The notes under the pieces: model-generated
What the model saw: the letters and a program-made list of their open reading frames with translations, nothing else
Databases searched by the model: none
Told to the model about the DNA's origin: nothing
From: Klebsormidium nitens
Lineage: Eukaryota > Plantae > Klebsormidiophyceae
NCBI GenBank assembly: GCA_000708835.1
Contig: DF237012.1
Location: forward strand, 62,001-126,000
Direction: 5' to 3'
DNA length: 64,000 nucleotides
Program-made: the position numbers and the translations under genes
Part shown: one piece after another, positions 22,901 through 40,900 of the stretch
Numbering within the stretch: position 1 is the first letter of the stretch
Layout: every line of letters begins with the position of its first letter

Positions 22901-25900
22901 GTATGGCTCTGCCAAATCAGCAAACAGTCCAGGCTTGTTCAACAGAAATGAAACATAGAAAAGATTTACAAGAAGCAACTCCCTGGGAGCACGGGTTCCG
23001 AATTCCTTCGACAATCTCAAAAACCTCTACAAAACCGGGAGGTATTGTTGACCATTCAGAAGTCTTTGCAGGCCCAGCCCGGCCGGGCGTTTCCCCGCAC
23101 CTCGCCCGCGTCATCAACTACGTCCTCCACATGGAGCGGACGGTCCGCGGCCTTCTGGGCGGGCCCTGGGACGGCCTCCGCTTTTCGGACAAGTGGCGGG
23201 CGTCCGTGGAAGGTTCACGGACTGTACGAGATCTGAAGCAACCGCTCATGGAGGTACGGTGTTACACTGGACGGGTCAACATTGCTACAAAATTCCCTTC
23301 GTATGTTTCTTTACGCCTAATAGGTGTTTATTCTACTATCTGAGAGTTCCTCATTTCGCTCTGCCTCTCAGCCGCAACTACAACGCTGTCAAACTGACAG
23401 CTCTGCGAACGTCCTATCGTGACGAAGTGAGAGTCACTTTTCATTCAATGTCAGTTCTTAACGCCGACGAATGTCTCTTGACGACCTCGACTTTGCACGG
23501 CGTTGTCCACAGGCGCAAAAAAATTGGCATCTTGCCAATGGATAGGATGCGCACGTCCGAGCTCCCTTTGGTGAAACTTCCCTACAGTGGTTTTCGATCC
23601 GGAAACTACACTCTCAAATTACTCTTACCAGCCCTTAACCACTCTGCAGTTGGAGCGCTCCCTCCGCCCGATTGCCCGCACCACTGATTGGCGACACGAG
23701 CTGGAGCTCGGCCCCCAACCGGTCGCCCACCACTCCGCCCAAAACCTCAAAACCCTACCCTCTTCGGACGCGTCATCCGCCGTCCAAAACCTGTCCAAAT
23801 CTTCCAAACCACGCCGCAAGGGCCAGAGCGCAACCCGCATCGATTCGGGGGGGTTCCGGAGAGAGGGCGTTCAGTGGTACCGGGGGGGGTGGCTGGTGAA
23901 AAGGGTGGCGGACTGGGAGAGACTGCCCCGGGGGGTACTCCGCAGGGCTGCAAAGAGGGGGGGTTTTGTGAAAATGGAGGGGCTGACGTATGCGGAAGAG
24001 GAGGCGCTGCCGCAGCGGACGGTGGCGGCAGCGTGGAGAACTAGAGTGGGGGATGCGAGGACTTTGGCCGACCTGGCGCTGCAGGTGGGTTCGTAATGCA
24101 CATGTGTCAGATTTGGGTTTAATCTGCTCCACTTGGTGCGCAGTCGAACGGTCCAAAGATGCGTTTCGGGAAACAACGGTCAGATAGCGTAAATATTGGA
24201 ATGGAGGTTTGCGCCACGCTATCAAGCTGACGCAAGTTGCGTAAAGGAACTGATCAGACGGGCCCTTCGGTGATTTGGACATGTTTCTAGCAAAAGCTTT
24301 GAATGCTTGTCCGGTTGAGAGTTTCAGCGGCTTGGGCGCAGGTGAATGAAAAGGGGATTTACACATGAGTAGCTGACGGTCCCAGGGTTCTGAGAGTAAC
24401 ATTCGCAGGCAGCTGGTGGATTTGCCTCTTGTCCTAATAGTACGCTTCTTGTGGTTGGCCGAAAGAAGCGCAAGGGCTCTAAGGTTCTTAGGGGTCTTCC
24501 ACTTGCAGAGGTGCGTAGAAGCGAAGGCAGAGCGCGTGTCAACAGCAGCCAGTAACAGGGCACCGTTGCAAGCCTTCTCCAGATTTTATTTGTAAAGTGA
24601 TATTTTTGCACAACTCTCACTCGAAGATGTGGTTTCGTTTCTTGATGTGACAGGTTCGAGAGCTCGACGAGACGATCAAATGGGCCGACCTCAAACGGCC
24701 CGTCCAAGGCCCCGGCTCCAGCGCGATTCCGGACGCTGGCACCGTCCTAGCCGTCACGGACAAGCGTACGGACGGCTGCGGGGCGGTTGAGTACCTGGTG
24801 CGAATAGCCACCGGGGTGGACCGGTCTGTCAGCGAGCCGACTGCCCAGGGGCCGATTCACACCGACGGCAAGAAGGGGAAGAAGCGGGCGGTGGATTTCA
24901 CGGCCAGCTGGCGGGCGGAGGCGGCGGTGCCGCTGTTTGCGGTCGAGCAGTATGAGGAGAAGGCGAGGCGGTGAGGTTCTGCGCTCTTTGTTGAGCCCGT
25001 TCTTTTATTATCGAAGAAACCGGTCACCAGACCTCCTCTTGCCGCTCCTGAAGCACAATTCGCCATAGTGCTACCGTCGAATATTTCTCAACGCAAAAGT
25101 ACTGACACCCGTGATTTGATTACCGAGGCAGTTTTCAATTGATAGAGATTGTTGTCTCGCATGATTGCTTCTCAAAGCACCTCCATAAAAGCTCGTTCAT
25201 TAGCTTATCCGTTTCGATCACCCTTTCACTGCTGGCCTGGTTGTTCGACAAATTGGAGCTTACTTTCTTAGTGGACAATCTGCAAAGTTCGACGACTCGA
25301 GGATTGTTCGTCCATCCATTCGTCCTGTTCTTTTGGTACTCAGCTTCCTGAGCCACAAACTGGAAAGCCCTTGCTTCCTTTCCAGGGACAAGGAACGTGC
25401 TGCGATGGCTCCTCCTCCAAAACCCCGCCCCACTCCCCCACTCAGCGCCCCCCCTCTTCGCCCCACTGGTCCCCGACACGGTTATCCTAACCAGTTTTAC
25501 AACCCGGTCGCCCCCCGGCCGAGTCCCCCGGTCACAACCTGGGTGCCCGCTCAACACGTGTACGTGCAAAGCCCACTGTTTGGTAACCCTAACCCCTGGC
25601 AGGGTGCCCCTAATCCCGCAACGTACCAAACCCCAGGGGCGTACCAGTGGGTGGCCCAGGACGGGAAAAGGCCAAAGCAGGCGGTCAAGAGGAAGGGTCA
25701 GCTTAACCCGGGCCAGCAACCGAGCTATCCCCAACCGCCCACCGATTTGATGCCGCCCCCGCAGCACTACACTGCCCAAAATTTAACCCCGGTATTGAAC
25801 CCCGGGCTTAACCAGGGCTTAACTCAATGCTTAACCCCACCCTTCCAAGCAGCGCCGGCGCCTGCGGGGCCGCTCGGGCAGTACTACTACCAGGGGGTTC

Positions 25901-28900
25901 CCACCCCGGGTGGCTTAGGTGTTAACCCAGGTGCTTTGGGCACTAACCAGGGTGGTTTGGCCGCTAACCCGGCTCCCTTAGTCGCGGGTTCCATGTGCAA
26001 CTATTGCACGGGGCTCATCGGGCCTGGAAAGTTGGGGGCGCGCTGCAGCAATTGCGGGGGGGGGTTCCACACGGACTGCATGCGAGTGCAAGGAAACCGG
26101 GTGGTTTGCCGCCAGTGCACCGAGAGGCTGTCTCAAGGGGAGAAGAAGAAGAATTGGAAAGTGGGGGCGGAGCCGAAATCAAAGAAGCCGGGGGGGGGCG
26201 TAAGTCTTGCCACTCCTATGGCGCCACCGCAAGTGGGGGCTGATGGGGAGATTGGGTCGCCGCCATTTCCAGCAAACGGAGTCGTTGTGGGGGGTAGCCA
26301 GACAATAAATGTTCCTTTCGGTGGGGTGGCAGGCCTGCCCGTGCCAGGATTGCCAGGAACGGAAAAGGGTAAGAAGCCCAAGAAGGGGTCTGAAAAGGGG
26401 GGTGCCGAAAAAGGGGTCGTCCTCAAGCAGGGGGGGCCGGGGCGGCAGCTGCGCCTGGTTTGGACGCCGGACCAGTGGGCTCCGGACGGGGCGTTCGTGA
26501 CCCCCCTGAAACGGGCGGAACTGGACTGGGCGCGCGCCCAAGAGTCGGCGTCCGAGTCGGACAAGAAGCGCGAGAAAGAGAACGCGGACCGGCTCGAGGA
26601 CAAGCGCTTTTCACGGGAGGCCGTCGAGCGGTTCAAGAAGCTGCGGGAGGAGCGCTACAAGAAGCGGTACGGCGAGGGGGGGTCCGGCGACGCCCCGGAA
26701 GCACCCCCTCAAACCGGGGAAGTCGGGGAAGTGCCCAGAACGCCGGCTGCAGCGACGCCCATGAAGCGGCTCAAGCCGCCCGTGAGGAAAACGCCGGAAT
26801 TGGAGCAAATGGCGGCGGAATCCGCGGTGCCCATCTGCCGGATCTGCTTCGAGAACTACAACGCGCAGCTGTGGTACATTGCGTGCGACAAGTGCGAGAG
26901 GTGGTACCACGGGGAGGCGTTCGGGCTCGTTCTCGAGGACGCGGCGAAGCTTGCCAGCTGGCGCTGCGGCAAGTGCCTCAAAAAACGGACCCCCGACGGG
27001 TGCCCGTACTTCGACCCGGTGGATGCGCTGGCGGAGCCGGTGTGGATCCGGCCGAAGGAGCGGACCGAGCGGAACGAGCGGAAAGAGGTGAAGATCGCAT
27101 ACATGCGCGACGTCGAGGGGACGGCGCAGTGGCACATGAAGCGGGAACGAGAGATGCGGCAGGGGCGCCCGGCAAGCGCACAAGAGGGCCTTGTTGGGAG
27201 CGTTGCGGCTTCCCAAGCCGGGGAGGCTAAGCTGGGCGAGAGTCAAGGGATCGCTGAACAGGGCCTCACAGTCTCTGGGGGAAGTGAACCGGTTGCAGAA
27301 CAGGGTTTGATGGGGCTTGAGGGGGCGGTCGGTGGGACGATTCCGGGGCCTGCCTGGCTCGACTCGAGCATGGACTTAGACCTGGAAGGGCTGTCTTTCA
27401 CAGACATGCTGTCGGTTGAACACCCGCCACCGAAAGCCGCAGCAACGGTACTGGCGACCGTTACCAAGCCCGTTCTGGGCACCGCAGCTGCACATACAGA
27501 GGGCCCGGTGGGGGGCGTGGAAGGTCTCACTCTACAAGGGTCGAAGGGGGCTGACGTGGCGCCGAATGATGGGTCAAGAGTTGAGGTGGCGAGCGGAACT
27601 GAAAACGCGGGGAGCGTTCCGTCCAGGATGCAACCGTTCGGGCACGTCATGGCGGCCAAAGTGGAGCGGATCGCCGCCCAGAAGCGGAGAGCGGAAGCGA
27701 AAGCGGAAAAGAAGAGGAAAAAGGAGGGGGGAGAAGATGGGGGCAAATCAGGGGAGGAGACAGGTCGGTTGGATATGGATGCGAAAGGGGGGGCAAAGAA
27801 GGGCGGGAAGAAGGTGGATGAAAAGACATCGATCCGTCCAGGGCAGCAGGAGGGGGCGGAAGACGTTCCGTTGGTGCTGCTTTTGGGAAGCGGGGGATCT
27901 GGAGAGAAGAAGAAGAAGAAACGGAAGAAGGGGGATGCGGAAAAGGACGGGCCGTCAGCGGAGAGAGAAGGGGAGCGGAAGAAGAAGAAACGGAAGAAAG
28001 AGCGAAATGGTGATGAAGGCGCTTCAGGGGGCGCTGGTGTTGCGCAAAACCCGGAAGGGATCCCGACTGCCACCGCACAGGACTCCGGGAACTCGGGTGC
28101 TCCTATTCTGATCAAGTTGCACACGGCCCGGGGGGGTGGGCAGAAGCCGGGAGGGGAGGGTGGGGCTGAGCAGGGTGACCTTACAAAGAAGGTGCGTTTC
28201 GGCAGCCACGAAGAGATTGCACCGGCATCAGTAAAGAAAACAAAGAGCGGGGGTAGCGCAGGAGTGGCGAAAGCCGAGTCAGATGCGAAGGCTCATTCAG
28301 GAGATTCCCAGATGTCGATTGAGAAGAGTAAGAAGAGAAAGCGGGTCTCGAACGACGCTCCTGCGGTACCCCCCGGAGCGAAGAGGCGGCGGACCGAGGG
28401 GGCTCGGAAGGCAAAAAGCGTGTTCGTGCTCCCTGCATTTCTGGCGGGAAGCAAAACGGAGAAAGTTTCGCTGTCGGGGGGGCAAGCCGGACTGACCGGG
28501 GGACAAAGCGGCGAGAGAGAAGGGCGCGAAACGAAGGCTGGGGGAAAGGCGAAAGGGCGCCGGAAAGCGGCTTCGCAACCGGAGGTAACGGAAGCTCCTG
28601 CTAGGGAGGATGTTGGTGCGGAGGGGGTCCCTAAGAAGGGCGATGCGGTGGGGGGATCGTCTGCACAGCAGGACGACGGGGGGGGGACGGCAAAGGAGGG
28701 CACTCTGCCGACCTACAAACGGCTGAAGATCAAGAAGCGAGCGGAAGGGGGGGATAGCGAGGCAGGTGCGAATAAGATCGAGGATTTGGGGGAAGGGTCC
28801 GGGGGTCTGATGGAGGGGGGCCGTGCGGAAGACGGAGCTCGGGAGGGGCGAGATGCAGAAGGGGTCGAAGCAAGGAGAGGGTTTGTGGAGGCGGGGCGTG

Positions 28901-31077
28901 CAGAGAAAGCAGAAAAGGCGGGTCCCAATGGGGTTGGAGGGGTTCGCTCTTCAGTGAAGGAGCAGAAGGGTTCGGTGTTGGAGGAAAGCAAGACGGTTCG
29001 GGAAGCGCGGAAGCCCTCTGAGGGGGCCGAGACGTCGGGAGATCGTCCCCGGGGGGAGCCCAGTGAGGTCTCCGAAGGACAGGGGAAAGGTGGGGAGAAA
29101 CTGGGTGAGGGGCGAAAAGCAGCGCAGCCGACTGTGAAGAAGATACGTGTCAGGATCGGTCGGGGGGGGGGCAATTTGCGGTCGGGCCAGTCCGAAAAGG
29201 TCGAGAAGCAACCCCCTCAGAGGGAAGCAAACATCCTGCAGGGTGATCCCGAAATGGGAAAGACAGACGCGCTGACTGTTGGGGGTGAGGAGGAGGAGGG
29301 GCGGAGAGGAGGCGTCGAAATGGGGGGAGGCTCGCCAGCCGGGTTTGCGAAGAACGCCAAGGACTTTGCCCCCCCGCCGCGGAAAACCCGCCGGCAGCTG
29401 AGGGATGAGGCTGGGAGCCTGACCAAACCCTCAGAAGGTGGGGGCGCGCTTGACACAGACAAGGGCCAGGCCGTTCTGAAGGAGAGTGTCAAGGGAAAAG
29501 GGCGAGCAGGCAAGGCGGAAAAAGGGAAGGGAAAAGAGCCGGAGGCAACGCCGCAGGGGGGGGGGAATCCAGGCGCAGCGGAGGAGGGGGGCGCTCCGGC
29601 GTGCTCGGTGTGCGGCCTGACGACGGGTGACGTGGCCACGTGCAGAGGGTGCCACGTGGCAGTTCATCTGGTGTGCTACGAGTACGACCAGCGGGTGCTT
29701 GCGAGGAAGGGAACGAAGGGCTGGAAGTGTACCGCGTGTCGAGCGGGAATTCCGGCAGGGCAAGGTGGGCTCTCTGAGCGGCGTTTCGTGCTTCGAGGGG
29801 TGTCTTTTTGAGACTTCTTTACTTTGGTTCCTTGGATTATTGTACGAGAGTAGAGCTTTAATTTCAGCTTTGCCGAGTTCGACGCACCTTTTGCGGTCGA
29901 CGGCTGCTGCGCTCAACATTATAATTGATAAGAAGCCGATCGTCCCAATGCCGACGGGGCGGGACTTTTCGAGCAGAGCTTTGCATGCTCCTCTTCAGGA
30001 ACCCTACCCAAGAAGGGCTCACATGTAAAGAGCAGCTACGTCTCTTTCTAATCGTGGATGAAGCTGCTGAGTTCAATCAACCAGCGCATTCCTGCGTGCC
30101 GATTCTTGTTAAGACCTTGAGAAACTCGCATTTCAAATGCACTGCAGCCCTCCCTCATTTCAAACGCCAGTACGCTCCTCCAGCATCGTGATGCCCTTCT
30201 CACCATTCCGTCCTTCATAACCAGTTCTACAAAACGCCTACAATATGATCCGTATTCCTTTCACTTAACACTTTTCTTTCCGTCGAACCAGGTGCCTGCC
30301 ATCTGTGTTCCCAGCGCGGGGGCCCGCTCGTTCCGACGGCGGAGGGCACGTGGGCCCACATGACGTGCGCGCTGTGGCACCCGCAGACGTACATCGACGA
30401 CCAGGGGCGCGTTCTGGACGTCGCCAAGATCCCCAAGGTGCGTTTTTTTCTGCGGCTTTCGTCGAAACGGATTCTGGTTTGAAAGGAACGCTAAACCATC
30501 TCGTTCTGGACTTGCAAGCCTTTTTTGATACATTACGTTACTCCTGCGGATGAATCACCAGGAGGTTTAATCCGGTCAGAATTCGTGAGCTCACTGAGGG
30601 TTTTGCCGGTCACTCTTGTTTTGGCGGGAATTTGCAGTCGAAGAGGAGTGAACAAGTCGTAGTTCACGAGCTGCGAGGGAGCCGGTAGAAACGTTTTGCT
30701 GTTAGTGAAGACAGCCGTGCTTGTTCCAAGCCGGTCCGATCCAGAGCACAAACAGATGGAAAAGAGTGGCGAAATAGAGTGGCAAAGAAGCCGCGTAATC
30801 CCTTCTTTTAGGAGACGTGTAGCTCCTTCCGAAGACTTTCCTGCTCCAAACAATCTTCGAGACTGTGCTTTTTCCCCCGCAGGATCGGTGGAAGCTGACG
30901 TGCTCCGTGTGCGAGACCCACGAAGGCGCGTGCATTCGGTGCAGCGCCCCGGGTTGCCACACGCCCCTGCACCCTTACTGCTGCCGTAAGGAAGGACTGC
31001 CGATTTTCATCATGCCCGGCCCGAAGTACCCCATCCACGTGGCTTATTGTCGTCAGCACGCGAACCAAGTGACGTAA
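13932..31077 (+). CDS. PTM: PTM-like DDT/WHIM/PHD chromatin protein with N-terminal Tudor-like fold, AT-hooks and C-terminal PZP module; multi-exon
   Basis: ATG at 13932 (LVGRTVEQ..GRVVSFN..YKVRWEDKTEDNF). AT-hooks RRRGRPRK and KRGRPK. DDT (LLSTYAFLRSFSQALYLSPFTLDDFLAAL, ~15700). WHIM1 (LDEITWPEF..YYALPPEAKLEALSFLCD, ~16350). PHD (CVLCGMEGNLLCCDGCPAAYHARC..WFCPEC, ~17600). WHIM2-like EPLGTDPQGRAYWF. PTM-family blocks YENRYADG..AAEAAA, CGWCHNC and LPRGVLRRAAKRGG. Further PHDs at ~25995 and ~26835. One ~4.4-kb exon (~25387-29764). Terminal exons 30292-30437 and 30883-31077 end in TAA. Confidence 0.85.
18880..19140 (+). repeat. Coding 12-bp minisatellite (PPANP/PSANP repeats)
   Basis: Repeated gcaaaccctcc(g/t)-type units encode NPPANPSANPPANPPANLQ within the large exon. 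Confidence 0.75.
22068..22380 (+). repeat. Three tandem copies of an acceptor plus exon start (two decayed, one functional)
   Basis: Functional copy: gcag|CCAAGAAGAAGGGCGCCAAGGCTGCGGCAGAACAGAGCAAAGTG at 22329. Copy at 22192: gcag|ccaaaaagaagtgcgccaaagccgcggcggagcagtgcaaagta, with an in-frame TAG at 22248-22250. Copy at ~22071: gcaactaagaagaagggcgc...ggagcaaagtg, with the AG lost. Confidence 0.8.
29602..31077 (+). other. PZP module (PHD - Zn knuckle - extended PHD) at the C-terminus of the PTM-like gene
   Basis: CSVCG..CRGCHVAVHLVCY..WKCTAC, then GACHLCSQRGGPLVPTAEGTWAHMTCALWHPQ, then RWKLTCSVCETHEGACIRCSAPGCHTPLHPYC..YCRQH. Junctions are GT-AG with matching phases. Confidence 0.85.
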
Positions 31078-32593
31078 GGAATGGTCAGGCTATCGGTACA
31101 GGATGTTTACATGTATGGTTGTGAGCTTGACCAGAGATAAACATACTCCACAGAGGAACGACCAGTCGAACCTGCAGGGCGTGTGGGTTGGACTTATGGA
31201 AGGTACGCAGGTGCGGCGCTGCAATCGTAGTGCACAGGTGGTAGAACAGACATGATAAGTGACTTGGTTCTCATGTTATGGCCTTTATTCGTCACGCATC
31301 TGCTCAGCTAAGTCGCTTCAGCTCTGTCCAATGACCGGCACTTCAATCACGCAAGTACTTGATCTCACACTTGGATGCACATGACGCAATCGCAAATATT
31401 CAACGATCGAGTATAATGGTGGATCGCTCCAGCTTTCCAGACTTTATAACGTCACAACTATGGTGTTCGAAAGTTGACGGCGGCAGAGGTATATGTCAGC
31501 GTTGCTGCGCATATCACAGTGATTCAAGAATATCAGTGCATAGATGACTAGTACAGATCACTGCCAGTTATATAAACGTTCTATATATGCAGACAATATA
31601 GAATGAATACCACTGAGAGGCACGGGACGTATGAAATCGTGCACGTACGCAGCCGGTCGACCAGAGATTTCTCAACCGTCCACATTACCATGCCCAATTA
31701 TGGCAGCCTGAGCGGTGCGTCAAAAAGACTTTCGCGCGGCCCATTGTCATGTAATGTGTTTGAATGTTGATTCTCAGTGACCGCGTCTCAGTGCACGGAT
31801 GAAGTGAAAAGAGCTGAAGACTCTGCAGATCTTTCAGGTTGCCTGAGGCTGCACCCGACCCGCCGCCGGGACGTGACGTCGGCTCCTACATAGCTAGTTG
31901 CACGCCGGGCTCGAAGCTGATCGTCATGGTCTCTTTCCGGCCCAGAATATCGTGGTCATTTGGATGAGAAAGCTATAGTATAGAAGTTAATAACGCCGTT
32001 GAGAACGGCGTCATGAGATCGAGTGATTGAGTGCACGAACCCAGTGAAGGATTGACAGCATGACTGAACCCAGGCGTGAACGGGAAGTAACTCATTGTGT
32101 TGCATGTATTGGCAACAAGCGCGCTTTGTGACGCGTGAATGATCAAAGAACTGGTCGATGCTCCGGCAGAAATCTACGACTCCTTTCTGCGCAACAAATT
32201 TGATACCATCTCTTACAGACGTGACCAAAACCTGTAGTGACTACAACAGGTATCACTGATCACTGATCATCGATGGATTTAGGCGGCGTCTGCACAGGAG
32301 GCAATCCAGTTGCACACAGCCATGTGCCCGCATGGATGCTGTGCGTGATCGGACGTGCCTGGAATGAGTGGCAACAAAGAAAGCGGCCCACCGCTTCAAT
32401 CAATTCATATTGATGGAGTGTATAGTTTCAACTCGTCTGTGACGACCTGTGCGGAAGGTGAGTGTACCTACTATGGTGTACCGTAAGTCAACATGTCCAC
32501 TTCCTGACTAGGAACTTAAAAGCTCAACACGCGCGCAGTACACTGCTTACAATTCCAAAAGTCCAAAAGTTGATTCGAGCCCAACTTACACAA

Positions 32594-35500
32594 CTAGGAT
32601 GGCGGCGCAGTGACCTCGACGTCCCCCTTCTTCTTGTGGGACAAGCTCAACTCCTCCACGCCTTCCTCTTCCCTTTTAAATTTCACGGACCGCAACTCGT
32701 CTCCCTTCTTATGGCCTTTCGCCGTGTGCTTAATCTCAAAATCCTTCGTCTTGAAGTCCGCGGTTAGTCTACAGATCTCGTCGTCCTTTTGCCACGTCAC
32801 GGCCAACACGTGGCCGGGCGCATCGTCGTCGATGCTCATCTCGCCGCCAAACGCGGGGTGCTGGTTCCGGAACCGGCACAGCTCAAGCAGCGCCTGAACC
32901 ACCGGGCGCTTCACCTGGAGAAGTGTCGATTTTATTGATGATCAAAGTTGCAAGAAAAGTGACGTCTTTCCCCAGGGACCGGGTGGGGTTGGCTTGGGGT
33001 ATAAAGCTTGAAGTCAGCTCGATGGTTAGGGTGGGGTCAGCTTGGGGTTTAGCTTGGGGTTCGGGTGGGGTTAGCTTGGGGGTTAGGGTGGGTTAAGGTG
33101 CGGAGCGCAGAAATTTCTCGAGCGGAGAGATACCTTGGTTAAAGTTTTCCGATAATTCATTCCCAATAGAATGTCCTTGAAGAGTCTTTGGCTACGGCCA
33201 GGGCAGCCGATTGTGCGGTTGTGAGACTCGAACTTTCTTCAAAAAGCTTATCATTCCATTCACCAAAACCGAGAGGTTGCTTACCTGTTCCACCGCCTGC
33301 TCGTACGAGTACAAGTGCCGGTTGATGGCCCGCCCGGTCCCCTCCTTCTTAACCAGGGTTAAGTCGTTGGACCCGACCAGCATGCCCACGTAGTAAACCA
33401 GGGGGATCCCCGGGCAGAAGAACTGGATGGCACGTGCCAGTAAATACGAGTGCTCGTCCTCCTCGCAGGCGGAGAAGTACGTGCAGTTTATCTGGTGGTC
33501 GATCGACACGTAGCCCGCTTTTTCCGGGTCGTACAGGTATTTTGCGGTGATGGAGGCCTTCTCCTTGGACGTGGCGTCGTTTGCGATCTTCTTCAGCTCC
33601 TCCGTGTCGCAGACCTGCGGCGGGCGTGGCAACGCGTGAGCGAGCTTAGGGTAAAACGAGTCCTTGTCAAGAAACGGGTTGGAGGGAACTGAAGCCTCAC
33701 GAAACCGGTAAGAGAAAACCAGAACTAGAGACGAACTCAGGTACTGCGACCTTAGGCTGATTTAGGGTGGCATGCGTGGCACCCTCACAGAAATCACACG
33801 CAATCCCCACGCCATCCTCAATTCAAACCCATCCTATGTCCGTTGGATTATAAGCAGAAGGTCGTTCCTGAGCTCGGCCGCCCGACTGTACCCCTTGATT
33901 CAACCTACAAACCTCATTTCTAAGCAGGGGCTAAACCACTGGGACCTCGTTATCCGGGCGCACCGTCACGAACCCATCTCCTCTCCCCGTTCGCAATCCA
34001 ACGCAACGGTTCATTTCAAGGCCCCCCTCAAACCCCACCGAAACCCCAAACCCCAAAACCCTCAAAAGACCTAAACCCTAAACCCTTAAACCCTAAACGC
34101 TAAACCCAAAACCCTTGAAGACCTAAACCCTAAACCCTCACCGACGCCAGCCCTGCGATGTCGTCGATGCCCATTCCGTCGTGCGTGTCGAGCACGGTGA
34201 TCTGGCGCCGGGGGCAGATGCGCAGCCAGTGCCGGAGGTTCTTCGCGGTCTGGAAGTAGAACGCGTGGAGGACAAGCAGCGGCAGCGCGAAGTCGTACAC
34301 CCAGTAGCCCTTGTCCGCGATCTTCAGGTTGGTCTTGTACTCCTCGTGGACCTCGCACAACAACCTGGGGTGTATAGGAAAAATGTTTCAGGGTTTCGGG
34401 CCTTCAGGGTTTCAGTGCAAGCTTTGCAAGCCTTGAGAAGATTCTGCAAGTCGTACACCCAGTAGCCGTCTTGTCCGCAATCTTCAGGTTGGTCTTGTAC
34501 CCCTCGTGAACCTCGCATAGCAACCTGGGGTGTACGAGACGAAGGGGTGTCAATCTTAGCGGCGTCGAAAGGCCTTGAGAGGTCACACCAGTTCTGAGAA
34601 CAACGAGCAAAGTGCTACGCAGACCTTCACGGGCCTTGAAGAAGCGTACACCCATTGTCAACAATTCATCACATCCTTAATGACAATCTTTCAATGCATG
34701 ATCCTCTCGGCCCACCACGGTAATACCTACTCGCCACCATCTGCCATCTGGTCGCCAGACCAGAGGATTCCGTTAACCAATTTTTTTAAGCCAGTCTCGA
34801 AATTTTGTTATAAGAAGAGGGCCTGAAGTAGTGTCAAGAATAACCCTACTGAATCCGGGCAGTGCATCTGGCTAGAAAGGTAGCATGCCCGGCTGGAAAG
34901 GTTTGGTTCGAGGCCCTCCTATTGAAGCGCAACCACCGGGAACCGGCTACTCAAGGTCTCATCTGTCTTACTTTAAAGGTGGCCTTCACCAGTGGATGGT
35001 GGGAGGCATTCCGATGCAGGGCAACGAGTCTTCCAAGACGAGGAAAGGTGGACCAAAAGCGGAAGGGATCCCCCAAAGCAGATTTGAGAGTTTGGGTTGA
35101 AGGGCGACATACCTGATCCCTTTCTCCTGCACCAGCTTCTCCATCTTGTCCAGCAACTCCCACGCCTCAGGCTCCTGCAGCAGAAGAGACAGAAGAACTA
35201 ATCCTCAATTTGCGCTGATCAAGCCTAGGCCTATGTAGAGTTCAATCCGTTCCCCGGGCCCTAAGAAACTGGAATTTTAGACGCGAAGCTATGATGCTCC
35301 GCACCCGTACCCAACCCCAGATTCTTAAACCAATCCCACCCGTCTTCCGAGAAGTGCCGTAATTCAACACACCCTAACTCAACGTAGCATTGACACTGCT
35401 GGAAGGGGGCTACAGGCTATCGCTTTAATTTCGTTCTGGTTCAGCGCCTTTCTACAGACCGATCACGCCCCGGCGATTGACTATGAGAGCTCATCAATCC

Positions 35501-37948
35501 GGACCTGGTTGAAAGAGCATAGGTTTCTAGTGAGCGATGTCGGCAAAAGCAAGGTTTTCGCAGACTGTACCTCGAAGAAACAGCGCGTATCAAGCTTTTT
35601 GGTGAAGTACCCGAAGGCGTCGAGACGGATCACGCTCGCCCCGTTGTCTCGAAGACTGGAGATGGACTGCTCTATGAACTGCCAACCTGGACGGATAAAG
35701 AAGACAAACTGTTCTCGCGACAATAGTTGGATGAGTGCTTTTGTGAATACGGCTTTGCTTAGTTCCCTATGAGGAAGCAAGTGCCTTTAGAAAAGCGCGT
35801 CGACGGTGATTGTTGGGAACGGAATGTTTCACGGATTGCCAGCCTGAATAAATTCGGAACGGAATGCCTCGGACGATATTCCGCCACGAACTGCACGACG
35901 AGAGAAAGGTGCGAAGTCCGATGGCGCTTCTGCCCCCTAATTTGAGCTATGCGCGCATTGAGTGCCTCGTTCGATTTCCCCACAAACTACAAGCCGGGAA
36001 AGCCTGGAAGACGACTTACTTGCGTTTACAGATCGGCTACGAACTGCCGGCTGAGACGGAAGCGGAAGACAGGCAAAATGCGTCCGACTGATTTCGACCC
36101 AGATCGCCAATCGATACTAGTTCCAAGAAAGACGGAATACGTCTAACGGACTCCACAACGAAACACTATTTGGAACGAATCTAGGAGTATGCGGGGAACA
36201 TTTACATGCCAACGTGCGTCATTGGGGGTACGTCGACTTGCTCCAGTGCAAAGCTCAGTCATTTGATTTCACGCGTGTGCAAATACAGAAAATCAGAACC
36301 CCAAAACCCAAAACCCCGAAAGCCGAAAACATACCGACACGCGTCATCGGGTTGATGTCAATCTGCTCGGGGCCAAACGTGCACCAGAGACGTCTCTTGC
36401 TCCCGTCCTTCATTTCCACCTCCAAAACGGGCTCCTTATCGTTGCGGCACCGGATCAGCTTCTTGTCGTTCTCGTTGGGCCGACCTGCGCATTGGGGGTT
36501 ATTGGGTCAATTGCAGCTTCCGTCAACGTAGGCTTGACAGCAGGTTATAAAAAGGCTTAACGACAGGGTAAGTGGCAGGTCCCACTGCAGAATCAACAGC
36601 AGATTTTGATGCAGCAACGCCTGGGATTCACGTCCTTATCCTTGTTAGGCGGACCTCCCTTTCAAAGTTTGTGAGAGTGATTTCCGTTACTGACATAGGG
36701 TTTACGCAGCGGGGTACAGAACAGGTTCGTTAGCAGGTTCCAGTGCCGGGAAAGCGGCAAAAGAGACGTTCTCGATCGCACTCGTCAGGCCGAACAAAGC
36801 ATCAGGCTCAACAGCAAGGGCTGTTCAAGATGAACGGCAGGCTCATAGAAGAGAAGTTACTGTAGCGATGCATTCTGGTGCAGAAAACGTCGTCTCCTCT
36901 TTTTAGCCTCTTGTAGATAGTGCGCAAGCACTAACCAGTGATTAAAAGTGCGGTTAATATCCTTAACCGAGTCAGCATGGCATCCCCACCTTTCGGCCAA
37001 AATTTGTCCCAGTCAACAAACATGTCCGCAAACTCGGAGTCGTCGCCCTTCGCCAGGAAGTCCTGAAACTCGTCCGAGTCGGGGGAAATGTGGTTAACCA
37101 TGAACTCCACGCACAGGTCGTACCGGTCAGCAATCTCCTTGACGTCATCCCATGTGCCGAACTTGGGGTCGATGTCCGTATAAGCGATTGGCGCAAAGCC
37201 GCCGTCGCCGGAGGAGCGGTACACTGGCAGCAGGTGCACACTGCCGATAGCGCCTGTCATTACGAAAAAACGAAGGTTGGGTTAAGCATGAGTTAAGGAA
37301 GGATTCAGGGCGATGGACTTGACTTGAGGGCTTGGAAAGTGTCGATGGTCCAAACAATTGGCGCGCTTTGAAAAACGGGCGAGTAAAGCCTCACCCGCTG
37401 GCAAGCAGCGCTGAGCAACTTTCCAGCTTTTATCAATGTACATACTATTCTCATAGTTGCACTCAGACACTCCAATGCAAGAGAACACCGCTGCAGGTCT
37501 GCATCTAAATAGCAGAAAGAAATGAGCCCAGGATCCTTTGAGTCCAGGGGAACCCTTCCAACTTAACGTGATCAGAGCAGTGCTGGATTGATCGTTTCCA
37601 ACCTCACCCTGAAGGAGTCAAGCTCCAACAGAAGCGCGACAAAGCAAGGCAGGTCGACAAAAGCTGGCATGCACTTTCTCTGGTGTCAAGGTCTAGTTGG
37701 TTTCGAAATCTTGAGGCCTTACCTCTCAAGTGGTCGTTCATGAAGCGCATCAGATCCTTGAGGCCCTCCCCAACCCCGTTCCCATACGTGCTCAGCTGCA
37801 CCTGGTTGCGTAACGTCATTTGGTCGAGCGGGTCCGGGTCGTCCGTTTTGATGCGGCCATCCTCAAAGTTGTCGCTCTTGTCGCTGTACAAGAGCTCGTT
37901 GAACCCAGGGAACATCGGCTTCTGCCCGATCGCGGTCCTCCGCTCCTT
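32594..37948 (-). CDS. GH13 subfamily 18 sucrose-phosphorylase-family glycoside phosphorylase, intron-containing; 5' end not resolved
   Basis: Exons in order: RNQVQLSTYG (~37800); GSVHLLPVY..GDGGFAPI..FMVNHIS (~36990-37255); LWCTFGPEQIDIN (~36335-36483); IRLDAFGY (nucleophile Asp, ~35620); EPEAWELL (~35115-35178); LLCEVHEEY (acid/base Glu)..VYDFALP..LDTHDG (transition-state Asp) (~34140-34364); HQINCTYFSA..PGIPLVYYVG..GRAINRH (~33285-33615); VKRPVVQALLELCRFRNQHPAF..., stop at 32594. All junctions are GT-AG and in phase. Confidence 0.92.
32980..33107 (+). repeat. G-rich TTAGGG-like degenerate repeat in the last intron of the phosphorylase gene (G-quadruplex potential)
   Basis: gggtggggttggcttgggg...ggttagggtggggtcagcttggggtttagcttggggttcgggtggggttagcttgggggttagggtggg contains many runs of three or more G. 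Confidence 0.7.
34030..34138 (-). repeat. Interstitial telomere-like (TTTAGGG)n degenerate array directly after a splice donor
   Basis: Plus strand cctaaaccctaaacccttaaaccctaaacgctaaacccaaaacccttgaagacctaaaccctaaaccc abuts the GTGAG donor at ~34140. Confidence 0.8.
34448..34534 (-). pseudogene. Pseudo-exon: frameshifted duplicate of the start of the phosphorylase catalytic exon
   Basis: On minus, acaccccag|gttgctatgcgaggttcacgaggggtacaagaccaacctgaagattgcggacaagacggctactgggtgtacgactt lies 160 nt upstream of the functional acaccccag|gttgttgtgcgaggtccacgaggagtacaagaccaacctgaagatcgcggacaagggctactgggtgtacgactt. The copy carries EEY to EGY and a 2-nt insertion. Confidence 0.88.
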
Positions 37949-37974
37949 CTGCAAAAAAGGTCAACCCTGTTAAC

Positions 37975-40900
37975 CATCGTGCTTCTTTGACATGTCTCCG
38001 ACAGGACCTTCTGGGCCTGGTACCCTTATTGAGGGCTGGTTGAAAGTCCTCATTGATCCAAAAGCTGTATAGAAAGGGTGTGCTGGGTTATGAGTTTGAA
38101 CAGACGACCTTTCAGAAAACCATCGATAGCAGCGGTATGCGTTTCAAGGAGGACGCCCACATCGCTGCCACTTGCTTCTGGACAACCCTTAGCTGTTGGG
38201 AGTCGACAAGAGAAAAGCAATACAGTATTGGAGTTCCTTATCAGTGCAGCAGAAAATAGTAAGAAACCAGATACTGGCCCGATGTGGCCACTGCCTAAGC
38301 AGAAGTGTCAGAGGTCGCAAGTCAAACTGCGCCACTCAATCAAAGCAGAGACGGTGGCTCCACAAGCTATGTAATCATAATGACGACATTTTGCAGCTGT
38401 CAATTCGTTTCTTCGGCTCAAGCAAGCTGACTATCAAGCAGTATTAAAAGAATTCTGGACTGGAGGTCAGGGCCGGCAGTCAGGCGTGCATTCTGCATGC
38501 AGCTATGCTGTTCATCTTCTCACTCGGCAACAAGGATTGCAAGACTTCTATAGCCTTGAATCACTGGGACTAATAACCTGACGTCATTGAGCACCATATG
38601 AAGCCATGAAGTGACCACCTGCGAGGGTGCCACTACCTCATGATCCTCAGCATTGTATCCCAAGCTGAAAATGAGACCCCTTAACACATCATACTGCACA
38701 ACATACTGCACAAACTTACCTCTAAAGCGCTCGAAACCATAGCTGGAGCCTCCTCAGCTACAGTCGGTGCAGGCCACAGCTCCTCCAATAAAAGTAGTGT
38801 AGCACCCACAGGAAGAAGCTTCAATGAGGGTGAACACTAGGCCAAACGAGGAGACAACGACACGTTTTGACGCTGCGCTCGTTTGATCTGCGTTCTGCAG
38901 CTGTTGCCGAACTTTTATGTGCGGATCACATTGTCTTGTTTGAATCCCGGGGGAACTGAAGTCCAAAGTCTCTGGAGAGCATACCTACAGTAGCACTGAG
39001 AATAGCTACGGTAGACAGCAGAACAGCAGAACAGCAGAAATCACACTTGAACAGCACTGTCAGCAGCTAGAATAAGATTGCGGCCGGCCTGCATGATGAC
39101 ATTCTCATGAAATCTGGGACAGGTGGCACACCGTGGCACATAGTGAGTCACGACTCAAATTCAGTCCAGAGTTCTCTCAATCATTGCGGTCGGCAAACGT
39201 CCGGTATCCACCGGTCACCTTTCCAGGGAATGATTGCTGACCAGTGACTCCCCGACTGCCTTTCAATTTCACGGAACGGGACTGCTGATGTCATCGGGTG
39301 TCAGTTGCTGGCAGTCCTCGTGGCCGTTCGATTGCTGTAGGTCACAGTAGGTGGCTTGTCACATCGACGGCCGTGCGGCATTTGCGGCTGTCGAAGCGCG
39401 GCCGTCGAAGGTGCTCGCGCGCGCGCTCGGACTCGGAGAGCTCTTCTAAAGGGAGAAAGGTTTCCTTTGGGTTTCACTGTTTCATGGGGGTGGTGGTGTT
39501 GTTGAAACGAGATAGGTAGATACAAAAATAGAGCTTGCGCATGTAGTTTAGGGCGAAAGCGGCCGCCTTTGCGTGCTTCAGCTTTAGCGCACCATAAAGC
39601 CAATACTTGATCTGTGAAGACGTCGAGAGCTCGGCCAGATGAGTGGTAGCAGCCGCGACATCTTTGATTCTTCGCTCGACCTCGAGCGGGAGCACCTCGA
39701 CAGAGGGTATGCGGAAGGGCTCAGGTGAGTTTTCAAGCCCTTCTCCGATGGCCAACTTATCGAGGCACCAGGCTTGGTTAAAGTAACCTGGGCTAAACTT
39801 TGGTTCGCCAACTCTCTGCATTTCACAATGCAAGTTTGGTGCATTCTCACCCAAATACTTTGAGATACTAGATTCAGCTTGGCCATTCGTTGTAGCGCTT
39901 CATTCACGCAAGCATCAGACCATTGTTTGTCCATGCACATCCTAGAGCGCCTCTTTTTAATATCCTGAAGCCCCATCGCTTGATGAGAGATCCCAGAATG
40001 CATGGGAGGGCAAAACATCGTGAAACGTTCGGGGATACAGGCAGCAGTCTTTGATAAACTTTCATCAGCCAGACAAATGACCAGATTGCTAGCTTTGCCA
40101 CATTACGACCTGATTAACAATCAGGCATTGATGTGGAGCGAAGCCACAGGCAAACCTGTTACACAAGAGAGTGGTGCCAAAGGTGGAGCGCTTTTAGATG
40201 CTCACAGCGCTCATGCAGGAAAGCGTGTAGTTTTTGTGCTGCAGGGACGGTCAGACGGAGGGGCTGAAGGAAGGGAGAGAAGTGGGCCTGAAGAGCGGGT
40301 TTGAGATTGGTGAGCTGCTTTAACGAGAGGCTGGCCAGCTTTGAGCATAAGTCATTCCCTGCGCAGTGATTTGATTCATTCCATGATGTCACTAAGAACG
40401 GCAGTACTGCCAGATAGCCCAGCCCTTCCCATCGTTGGTTCCAATTTCAATAGGGCAACGTCAATTTAAGGAGGTTTTCACCAACATTTGATAAACTGGA
40501 GATTGCAGGTTGAGTGAGAGGTGATGCTGCTCCTTGCTCCACACATTTGTGCGACTGCATCTTTCTGACTTGGTTTGCTTTGGATCAGGGGAGGAAGTTG
40601 GATTCTACTCTGGGTGTGTGGAGATTTGGAGCAAGGCCTTGGAGACAGACGGGACTCTCTTCAGCGCCAGGTATGCTGAACTCTTTGCTTGTTGAACGGG
40701 ACCCGCAAATAACCCTTTAAACTTGGAGTTTGTTGACCTGCGATTGTGGGGTACCCAAAAGGGCAGCAAAAGTATATTGAGATGTATCTATCAGGGCGCA
40801 GAAGCCTGACGATCTACTTTTAAAGCGCAAGTTCTTGTGAGGTGTATGATATCGAGATGCCTTCCGGACAACTGTTGACTGCTATGAGAAGAACAAGAGG

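What the first reader, a model, noticed from the sequence alone, without database searches (positions are those of the whole stretch)
32594..37948. Bacterial-type GH13_18 glycoside phosphorylase domesticated as an intron-rich eukaryotic gene
Seen: a complete catalytic triad (RLDA, CEVH, THDG) spread over at least eight spliceosomal exons and flanked by ordinary eukaryotic genes, so contamination is unlikely. Established: characterised GH13_18 enzymes (sucrose, sucrose-6'-phosphate, glucosylglycerol and glucosylglycerate phosphorylases) are bacterial, and land plants cleave sucrose with invertase and sucrose synthase. Inference: an old horizontal acquisition giving this alga an ATP-saving phosphorolytic route from a compatible solute to glucose-1-phosphate, plausibly relevant to salt, cold or desiccation recovery. 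Homologs in other algae may already be annotated; I cannot check.
Basis: partly seen in the sequence, partly recalled or inferred. Interest (0 to 1): 0.78.

Follow-up and report, generated by a model that had tools for sequence, protein, structure and literature searches.

The report
Known algal sucrose-phosphorylase-family gene, second copy
This is a real, expressed, intron-split gene of the land-dwelling green alga Klebsormidium for a bacterial-type sugar phosphorylase, but bacterial origin for this family in green algae was published in 2026, so only details are new (introns shared across green algae, an unusual substrate loop).

Summary
A minus-strand gene with nine exons (ATG 38740, stop 32594) encodes a 570-aa protein collinear with sucrose phosphorylase TIGR03852 (GH13_18). 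All catalytic and glucose-binding residues are intact. Transcript contigs from four studies remove every intron exactly at GT-AG sites and carry poly(A). dN/dS against a related alga is 0.14.

The gene sits in one fully supported green-algal clade (Klebsormidium, Trebouxiophyceae, Sphaeropleales) nested among bacterial enzymes. Six of its eight introns lie at the same position and phase as in chlorophyte homologues. So there was one old bacterial transfer, or later alga-to-alga spread, and not an acquisition by this alga alone.

This is already known. A K. nitens paralogue (57% identical) and the Coccomyxa gene are annotated "sucrose phosphorylase". A 2026 paper (PMC13315243) reports bacterial HGT of this gene into Sphaeropleales, K. 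nitens and Coccomyxa. The scan also flagged GH13_18 genes on other pieces of this genome.

The substrate is untested. The specificity loop reads SIDHQ, not the sucrose-phosphorylase NLDxYQ. It keeps every residue that binds sucrose 6F-phosphate in the bacterial enzyme TtSPP. This copy is the conservative paralogue and never surfaced in the protein database searches.

The parts
38720..38885 (-). Exon 0: 5' UTR plus start codon (ATG 38740-38738) and the first 7 codons. The upstream end is approximate.
   Evidence: Loose 5' letters of transcript contigs match 38722-38751. A GT donor follows 38720. It is the first ATG and has an in-frame stop upstream.
37723..37948 (-). Exon 1: acidic N-terminal extension and the start of the conserved core (NQVQLSTYG)
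36990..37253 (-). Exon 2: beta2-beta3 region with the -1 subsite Asp99 and His137
   Evidence: TIGR03852 positions 28-117 at 118 bits. 7XDQ E=1.8e-31. Residue table.
36335..36484 (-). Exon 3: loop B (IRCRNDKEP, Arg184 equivalent to TtSPP Arg134), Phe207 and Gln211
35571..35686 (-). Exon 4: catalytic nucleophile motif IRLDAFGY (Arg241, Asp243, Tyr247)
35113..35174 (-). Exon 5: 62-nt exon. Its length and both flanking intron positions are conserved in Coccomyxa and Myrmecia.
34142..34364 (-). Exon 6: acid/base CEVHEEY (Glu284) and transition-state THDG (His341, Asp342)
33285..33614 (-). Exon 7: loop A YVSIDHQIN (His394, Gln395) and GRAINRH (Arg453, His454)
32369..32914 (-). Exon 8: C-terminal beta-sheet domain, stop codon 32596-32594, 3' UTR with poly(A) sites near 32395 and 32369
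34440..34534 (-). Decayed copy of the 3' splice site plus the start of exon 6, inside intron 5 and 160 nt upstream of the real one. It is not used in the transcript contigs.
   Evidence: Direct repeat D2 at 92% identity. Sequence read. The joint goes 35111 to 34362 only.

Best explanation
This is a functional nuclear gene of Klebsormidium nitens. The species name comes from earlier scan notes and fits the paralogue's NCBI record. It encodes a retaining alpha-glucoside phosphorylase of GH13 subfamily 18.

It is one of two sister paralogues in this alga. It belongs to a green-algal clade that descends from one old bacterial gene. That gene gained introns before it reached, or diverged into, Klebsormidium, Trebouxiophyceae and Sphaeropleales.

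Inferred mechanism: Asp243 attacks C1 of an alpha-glucoside and forms a covalent glucosyl-enzyme. Glu284 protonates the leaving group. Inorganic phosphate, held by loop-B Arg184, loop-A His394 and Gln395, then takes the glucosyl group to give alpha-glucose 1-phosphate.

The most likely substrates are sucrose and/or sucrose 6F-phosphate. The enzyme is probably cytosolic, because the N-terminus is acidic.

Shown here: gene structure, splicing, polyadenylation, family membership, intact catalytic residues, purifying selection, clade membership and shared introns. Inferred: phosphorolysis, the substrate, the compartment and the physiological role.
For: - Gene model and RNA.
- Family: a collinear TIGR03852 hit on every larger exon, and the best PDB matches are GH13_18 phosphorylases.
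- Residues: all -1 subsite and catalytic residues are present. So are the equivalents of TtSPP Arg134, Tyr201, His344, Gln345 and Arg399 (roles from PMC6720575).
- Selection: dN/dS is 0.14 over 291 codons against the orthologue on metagenome contig L086.
- Phylogeny: 18 algal sequences form one clade at 100/100, nested among bacterial enzymes. The window gene and K. nitens P0169 are sisters at 100/99.
- Identity: 52-57% to algal homologues against 44-49% to the best bacteria. The K. nitens paralogue used as query reached at most 47% against 570 relatives in GTDB genomes.
- Introns: all eight positions are shared with P0169. Six are shared with Coccomyxa and Myrmecia, and three of those also with Tetradesmus.
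- Species-tree fit: a tree with chlorophytes held monophyletic is not rejected (p-AU 0.175).
- Literature: HGT of this gene into these algae (PMC13315243), and desiccation-induced transcripts in Klebsormidium (PMC6691101).
Against: - No biochemical datum exists for any algal member.
- Loop A is one residue shorter than in sucrose phosphorylases. It lacks the NLDxYQ motif and the Asp342 register. So sucrose is not assured.
- Lys185, conserved in the other algal and nearby bacterial enzymes, is Asn here.
- The bacterial sister group is an unresolved polytomy, so no donor can be named.
- The patchy distribution needs either many losses or alga-to-alga transfer, and these cannot be told apart.
- The exon-wise sum of bit scores is only an approximation of a whole-protein score.
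Confidence: 0.8

Rival explanations
1. It is specifically a sucrose 6F-phosphate phosphorylase of the TtSPP kind. It interconverts sucrose-6F-phosphate plus phosphate with glucose-1-phosphate plus fructose-6-phosphate, rather than acting on free sucrose.
For: His replaces the sucrose-phosphorylase Tyr344, as in TtSPP. All TtSPP residues docked against fructose 6-phosphate are present: Arg134, Arg195, Tyr201, His344, Gln345 and Arg399. A tree uniting the algal clade with the bacterial His-type clade is not rejected (p-AU 0.415). Sucrose 6F-phosphate is a normal intermediate of sucrose synthesis in green plants and algae (established knowledge).
Against: The ML tree puts the algal clade among sucrose-phosphorylase-type enzymes and apart from the His-type bacterial clade. 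Loop A (SIDHQ; algal consensus xPHQ) differs from GFDVHQ and is shorter. TtSPP itself is promiscuous, so these residues do not fix specificity (PMC7178133).
Confidence: 0.3
2. It was acquired recently from bacteria by the Klebsormidium lineage alone, which is the strict sense of 'this alga'.
For: GH13_18 is otherwise bacterial. No other streptophyte or land-plant homologue surfaced.
Against: It lies in one 100/100 clade with chlorophyte genes. Six intron positions and phases are shared with them. The best bacterial identity is below 50%.
Confidence: 0.03
3. The enzyme has lost phosphorolysis and works as a hydrolase or transglucosidase on an unknown alpha-glucoside.
For: Loop A and part of loop B differ from every characterised specificity class. 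The sister paralogue P0169 has clearly remodelled its acceptor and phosphate pocket (Arg to His183, Tyr to Cys246, His to Pro453).
Against: This copy keeps the residues that hold phosphate or sulfate in solved relatives: loop-B Arg, Tyr247, His/Gln of loop A, Glu284 and Asp342. It is under purifying selection.
Confidence: 0.12
4. It is bacterial contamination or a dead relic.
For: None beyond the bacterial affinity of the family.
Against: Eight GT-AG introns are removed in poly(A) transcript contigs from four studies. There is a PHD-finger neighbour. The 570-codon frame is intact and dN/dS is 0.14.
Confidence: 0.01

Closest known systems
K. nitens 'sucrose phosphorylase' paralogue (P0169; NCBI assembly GCA_000708835.1, contig DF237122.1)
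   Same: 57% identical and sister in the tree at 100/99. All eight intron positions are identical, and six internal exons have identical lengths (264, 150, 116, 62, 223, 330 nt).
   Different: P0169 has lost the loop-B Arg (His183), Tyr201 equivalent (Cys246) and the His after Arg399 (Pro453). The window copy keeps all three. The window copy's product was never listed in three database searches.
Green-algal SP genes reported as bacterial HGT (Sphaeropleales, C. subellipsoidea C-169, K. nitens; PMC13315243)
   Same: Same family and same clade. Coccomyxa P0154 and Tetradesmus P0158 are 49-56% identical, with shared introns.
   Different: That paper names the enzyme sucrose phosphorylase. In the passages read, it does not discuss intron sharing or the non-canonical loop A. 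Whether it counted this second K. nitens copy could not be checked, because its supplements are not held.
TtSPP, promiscuous sucrose 6F-phosphate phosphorylase of Thermoanaerobacterium thermosaccharolyticum (PDB 6S9V)
   Same: His-Gln in loop A, plus the Arg134, Tyr201 and Arg399 equivalents. Exon 2 scores 109 bits and exon 7 scores 83 bits.
   Different: It is bacterial and intronless. Its loop A is GFDVHQ against SIDHQ here. In the ML tree, TtSPP-like His-type bacterial sequences form a separate clade; TtSPP itself was not in the tree. A sister relation of that clade to the algal clade is not rejected.
Bacterial sucrose phosphorylases (BaSP 1R7A; 7QQJ; Paenibacillus, Lachnospiraceae, Caldatribacterium, Spirochaetales enzymes)
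   Same: Same fold family, catalytic triad and -1 subsite. These are the nearest bacterial relatives at 44-49% identity.
   Different: They carry N(L/V)D(I/L/V)YQ in loop A and Tyr at the start of loop B. The alga has a shorter loop with His, and Arg at the start of loop B.
Glucosylglycerol phosphorylase (7XDQ) and glucosylglycerate phosphorylase (E. coli YcjM)
   Same: GH13_18. 7XDQ is the best PDB hit for exon 2.
   Different: Neither the VGAIYQ motif (glucosylglycerol enzyme) nor the (T/S)ETN motif with a loop-A Glu (glucosylglycerate enzyme) is present.

Membership tests
GH13 subfamily 18 (NCBIfam TIGR03852 sucrose phosphorylase family) | Collinear full-length match to the family profile | tested here: met
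   Exons hit profile positions 28-117, 118-162, 169-206, 227-298, 318-406 and 404-469. The sum is about 416 bits against a cut-off of 334.4. The pieces were scored apart, so the sum is approximate.
GH13 subfamily 18 | Catalytic Asp nucleophile, Glu acid/base and Asp transition-state stabiliser, plus -1 subsite Asp, His, Arg, His, Arg | tested here: met
   Asp243, Glu284, Asp342; Asp99, His137, Arg241, His341, Arg453 (roles from PMC6720575).
GH13 subfamily 18 | Phylogenetic placement within the subfamily | tested here: met
   Nested among bacterial enzymes annotated as sucrose phosphorylase or carrying GH13_18 loop-A motifs, with E. coli YcjM as outgroup.
GH13 subfamily 18 | Phosphorolysis with retention, giving alpha-glucose 1-phosphate | not testable with these tools
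   Needs an enzyme assay.
Sucrose phosphorylase sensu stricto (EC 2.4.1.7) | Loop A motif N(L/V)D(I/L/V)YQ (PMC7178133) | tested here: not met
   The loop reads YVSIDHQ. His replaces Tyr344 and the loop is one residue shorter. The algal consensus is xPHQYN.
Promiscuous sucrose 6F-phosphate phosphorylase (TtSPP type, EC 2.4.1.329) | Loop A GFDVHQ with His344, plus Arg134 and Tyr201 holding the 6F-phosphate | tested here: inconclusive
   His, Gln, Arg134, Tyr201 and Arg399 equivalents are present, but the rest of loop A differs. The ML tree separates the clades, while a joint clade is not rejected (p-AU 0.415).
Strict sucrose 6F-phosphate phosphorylase (IcSPP type) | KxxYYQ in loop A | tested here: not met
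Glucosylglycerol phosphorylase / glucosylglycerate phosphorylase | VGAIYQ motif / (T/S)ETN motif and Glu in loop A | tested here: not met
   CEVH and HQ are present instead.
Eukaryotic nuclear, spliceosomal gene | GT-AG introns removed in polyadenylated RNA | tested here: met
   Seven joints appear in contigs of four runs, an eighth intron is shown by the 5' loose ends, and there are poly(A) tails. The runs' RNA label is the tool's guess, but a fully spliced, poly(A)-ended 2-kb contig fits only RNA.

The most novel reading that the evidence does not exclude
The whole green-algal clade, of which this is the conservative Klebsormidium copy, may not be a sucrose-degrading enzyme. It may be a sucrose 6F-phosphate phosphorylase that can run towards synthesis. 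Glucose 1-phosphate from starch phosphorolysis plus fructose 6-phosphate would give sucrose 6F-phosphate. Sucrose-phosphate phosphatase would then pull this to sucrose. That would be a UTP-independent shortcut from starch to the protective solute during desiccation or cold in land-dwelling algae. It would fit the co-induction of 'sucrose phosphorylase' with the starch-to-sucrose pathway in K. dissectum (PMC6691101).
Probability: 0.15. Interest if true: 0.7.

Novelty: already known. Interest (0 to 1): 0.3.

Why it matters
The headline is already known: a bacterial sugar phosphorylase living as a normal gene in a streptophyte alga. It is in the databases and in a 2026 paper, so little is added there.

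Three details may be useful.
1. Six intron positions are shared between a streptophyte and chlorophytes. This dates the gene's eukaryotic life to before those copies diverged. It argues for one transfer followed by loss or alga-to-alga spread, not repeated bacterial transfers.
2. No algal member has the sequence signature of a true sucrose phosphorylase. All carry His where sucrose phosphorylases carry Tyr. The database name is therefore unproven, and the substrate may be sucrose 6F-phosphate.
3. Klebsormidium has two copies, one conservative (this one) and one with a remodelled pocket. That is a natural pair for testing how specificity evolves.

The family is of biotechnological interest, so an eukaryotic, possibly differently specific branch is worth one enzyme assay.

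Tried and rejected
- Contamination and pseudogene readings are rejected.
- A Klebsormidium-only transfer is rejected by the clade and the shared introns.
- Pfam on single exons was nearly blind: only exon 2 hit PF00128. NCBIfam was informative.
- Pfam on ORFs at 39-50 kb gave nothing, so the gene on that side remains unidentified.
- P0151 scored above all bacteria against the algal profile and looked like a possible donor relative. It is a Lachnospiraceae-like sucrose phosphorylase with an internal assembly duplication.
- I first read the algal His344 as convergent with TtSPP, because the ML tree separates the clades. The AU test does not reject a joint clade (p 0.415), so I withdrew that claim.
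- The window's own protein was looked for in three word-index searches and one exhaustive search. It was never listed at full length. I cannot tell whether it is unannotated or mis-modelled in the public K. nitens gene set.
- No structure was predicted. A model would not have settled the substrate anyway.
- The supplements of PMC13315243 are not held, so its gene list for K. nitens could not be compared.
- No donor phylum could be named. The nearest bacteria (Bacillota, Spirochaetota, Thermodesulfobacteriota (Desulfobacterales), Atribacterota) form a polytomy.


Full report
**Observation.** ORF fragments on the minus strand between 32594 and 37954 read like pieces of a sucrose-phosphorylase-type protein. 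Joining them at GT-AG borders gives eight exons and one open frame of 552 codons.

Contigs of four public runs from four studies were laid on 32300-38250. They carry exactly these seven intron deletions (CT..AC on the + strand). They show zero mismatches in the listed pieces and end in poly(A) near 32395 and 32369. The tool only guesses that the runs are RNA. A fully spliced 2-kb contig with a poly(A) tail fits only RNA.

The same contigs continue 5' of 37948 into letters that match 38722-38751. That exon ends at 38720 before a GT. It holds the first ATG of the transcript (38740), in frame and preceded by a stop. The gene therefore has nine exons and eight introns and encodes 570 aa. The finding's coordinates cover all but the first small exon.

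**What it is.** Each larger exon matches NCBIfam TIGR03852 (sucrose phosphorylase) in collinear order. The scores are 118, 39, 37, 92, 97 and 33 bits, against a whole-protein cut-off of 334. Pfam on single exons saw only a weak alpha-amylase hit.

The best solved structures are:
- glucosylglycerol phosphorylase 7XDQ;
- sucrose 6F-phosphate phosphorylase 6S9V;
- sucrose phosphorylases 7QQJ and 1R7A.

In an alignment of 303 family members, the protein has the following residues:
- the nucleophile Asp243 (IRLDAFGY), acid/base Glu284 (CEVHEEY) and transition-state Asp342 (THDG);
- all glucose-binding residues: Asp99, His137, Arg241, His341 and Arg453.

The roles of these residues come from the TtSPP/IcSPP structure paper PMC6720575. 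The neighbour at 25333-29811 is a 1492-aa PHD-finger ORF. The N-terminal 50 residues are acidic and do not look like a transit peptide. A cytosolic location is therefore inferred, not shown.

**Relatives.**
- An exhaustive search with exon 7 found 456 relatives. Most were fragments. The best was an 86%-identical fragment, P0001.
- Word-index searches seeded with algal homologues, and then with a profile of them, returned about twenty eukaryotic members. They are a K. nitens protein annotated "sucrose phosphorylase" (P0169), three Coccomyxa species (C-169 also annotated "sucrose phosphorylase"), Trebouxia, Myrmecia, two Apatococcus, Tetradesmus obliquus, two EukProt transcriptome entries and unnamed transcript-size contigs.
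- After these came bacteria, with a score gap. No other streptophyte, land plant or non-green eukaryote appeared.
- The window protein is 57% identical to P0169, 49-57% to the chlorophyte proteins and 44-49% to the best bacteria.
- Among 570 relatives in one-genome-per-species bacterial and archaeal contigs, the best identities to P0169 (the query's first sequence) were 39-47%. They came from Spirochaetales, Paenibacillus, Lachnospiraceae, Caldatribacterium, Desulfobacterales and Halanaerobium.
- The window's own product never appeared at full length in any search. P0169 lies on another contig of the NCBI K. nitens assembly, so it is a paralogue.

**Phylogeny.** The tree used 61 sequences and 480 columns under LG+C20 PMSF, with E. 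coli glucosylglycerate phosphorylase YcjM as outgroup.
- All 18 algal sequences form one clade at 100/100 on a 0.64 stem. It sits inside a poorly resolved group of bacterial enzymes with the sucrose-phosphorylase loop motif.
- The window gene and P0169 are sisters at 100/99, so the duplication happened in the Klebsormidium lineage.
- Trebouxiophyceae form a clade at 99/95, and the Tetradesmus group forms one at 100/100.
- Holding all chlorophytes together, as in the species tree, costs 4.3 log-likelihood units and is not rejected (p-AU 0.175).

**Introns.** Annotated proteins were threaded exactly onto their genomic loci, and intron positions were mapped on a protein alignment.
- All eight introns of the window gene are shared with P0169.
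- Six are shared in both position and phase with Coccomyxa C-169 and Myrmecia.
- Three of those six are also shared with Tetradesmus.
- Exon lengths 150, 116, 62 and 223 nt recur in Klebsormidium and Coccomyxa.

A bacterial gene has no introns. These introns must therefore have been gained once, in a eukaryote ancestral to, or donor of, all these copies. So there was one bacterial transfer. It was followed either by vertical descent with many losses (land plants and Volvocales among them) or by alga-to-alga spread. My data do not separate these two.

**Selection.** A 125-kb metagenome contig (L086) carries the orthologue from a related alga. Exon 6 is 97% identical and exons 7-8 are 79% identical at the protein level. 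Over 291 codons, dN/dS is 0.14 with dS 0.65.

**Function.**
- The review of the subfamily (PMC7178133) gives loop A as the specificity fingerprint: N(L/V)D(I/L/V)YQ for sucrose phosphorylase, GFDVHQ for the promiscuous sucrose 6F-phosphate enzyme TtSPP, KxxYYQ for strict ones, VGAIYQ for glucosylglycerol, and Glu plus (T/S)ETN for glucosylglycerate.
- The window protein reads YVSIDHQIN. The algal consensus is xPHQYN, one residue shorter than in sucrose phosphorylases. HMMER aligns the His with BaSP Tyr344 and with the TtSPP His.
- In TtSPP, Arg134, Tyr201 and His344 hold a sulfate at the 6F-phosphate site. Arg134, Arg195, Tyr201, His344, Gln345 and Arg399 contact docked substrate. All have equivalents here: Arg184, Arg241, Tyr247, His394, Gln395 and Arg453.
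- The paralogue P0169 has lost three pocket residues: Arg to His183, Tyr to Cys246 and His to Pro453. The window copy is therefore the conservative one.
- In the ML tree, the bacterial His-type clade is separate from the algal clade. A tree joining them is not rejected (p-AU 0.415). Whether the His was inherited or arose twice is open.
- I therefore commit to a retaining phosphorylase that makes glucose 1-phosphate from sucrose and/or sucrose 6F-phosphate. The substrate is unproven.

**What is known.**
- PMC13315243 (Nat Commun 2026) states that sucrose phosphorylase was thought to be bacterial only. [quoted passage not shown] It also reports higher transcripts in dark/glucose in Tetradesmus.
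- PMC6691101 lists sucrose phosphorylase among transcripts raised by desiccation in K. dissectum at 20 °C, together with starch-degrading and sucrose-synthesising enzymes.
- All characterised GH13_18 enzymes tabulated in PMC8950772 are bacterial.
- Earlier notes of this scan flagged GH13_18 genes on other pieces of this genome. They also re-read this stretch for its atypical loops.

The central claim is thus already known.

**Verdict.** Novelty is "already known" and interest is modest.

The additions are the full gene model with its 5' exon, the intron sharing across green algae, the non-canonical loop shared by the whole algal clade, and the contrast between the two Klebsormidium copies.

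Noticed in passing
window 34440-34534 (copy) and 34310-34374 (original), minus-strand gene: Intron 5 holds a 92%-identical copy of the 3' splice site plus the first part of exon 6. It lies 160 nt upstream of the real one and has a 2-nt insertion. Transcript contigs use only the real acceptor. The scan noted the same kind of decaying exon-start copy in COG7 and DPE2 introns of this genome, so it may be a genome-wide habit.
   Followed up: partly
L086 1376-1447, 1538-1591, 1842-1916: In the related alga's orthologue, intron 6 holds three partial, decaying copies of the end of exon 6 (residues 332-355). These are exon-end copies on the donor side.
   Followed up: no
L086 3001-3669 compared with window 32594-33614: The related alga's orthologue has exons 7 and 8 fused. 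Intron 7 is absent there, while introns 5 and 6 are present. Both K. nitens paralogues have intron 7, so this looks like an intron loss in the relative.
   Followed up: partly
window 34041-34138, 36297-36330, 32984-33092: Degenerate 7-8-nt arrays resembling the plant telomere unit TTTAGGG sit just inside introns. Two start a few bases after the donor site of introns 6 and 3, G-rich on the gene strand. One lies in intron 7 in the opposite orientation.
   Followed up: no
window 25333-29811 (+): An uninterrupted 1492-aa ORF with PHD fingers and long low-complexity Lys/Gly/Glu-rich stretches. It lies in a region of strong GC and AT skew (26-30 kb).
   Followed up: no
P0360 (Tetradesmus obliquus, 1006 aa): A second Tetradesmus homologue is annotated as fused to FAD-binding domains (PF07992, PF01494). 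This is possibly a merged gene model.
   Followed up: no
P0151 (ENA metagenome, 588 aa): A bacterial sucrose phosphorylase with an exact internal duplication of about 110 residues. It is most likely an assembly artefact that inflates its profile score.
   Followed up: yes
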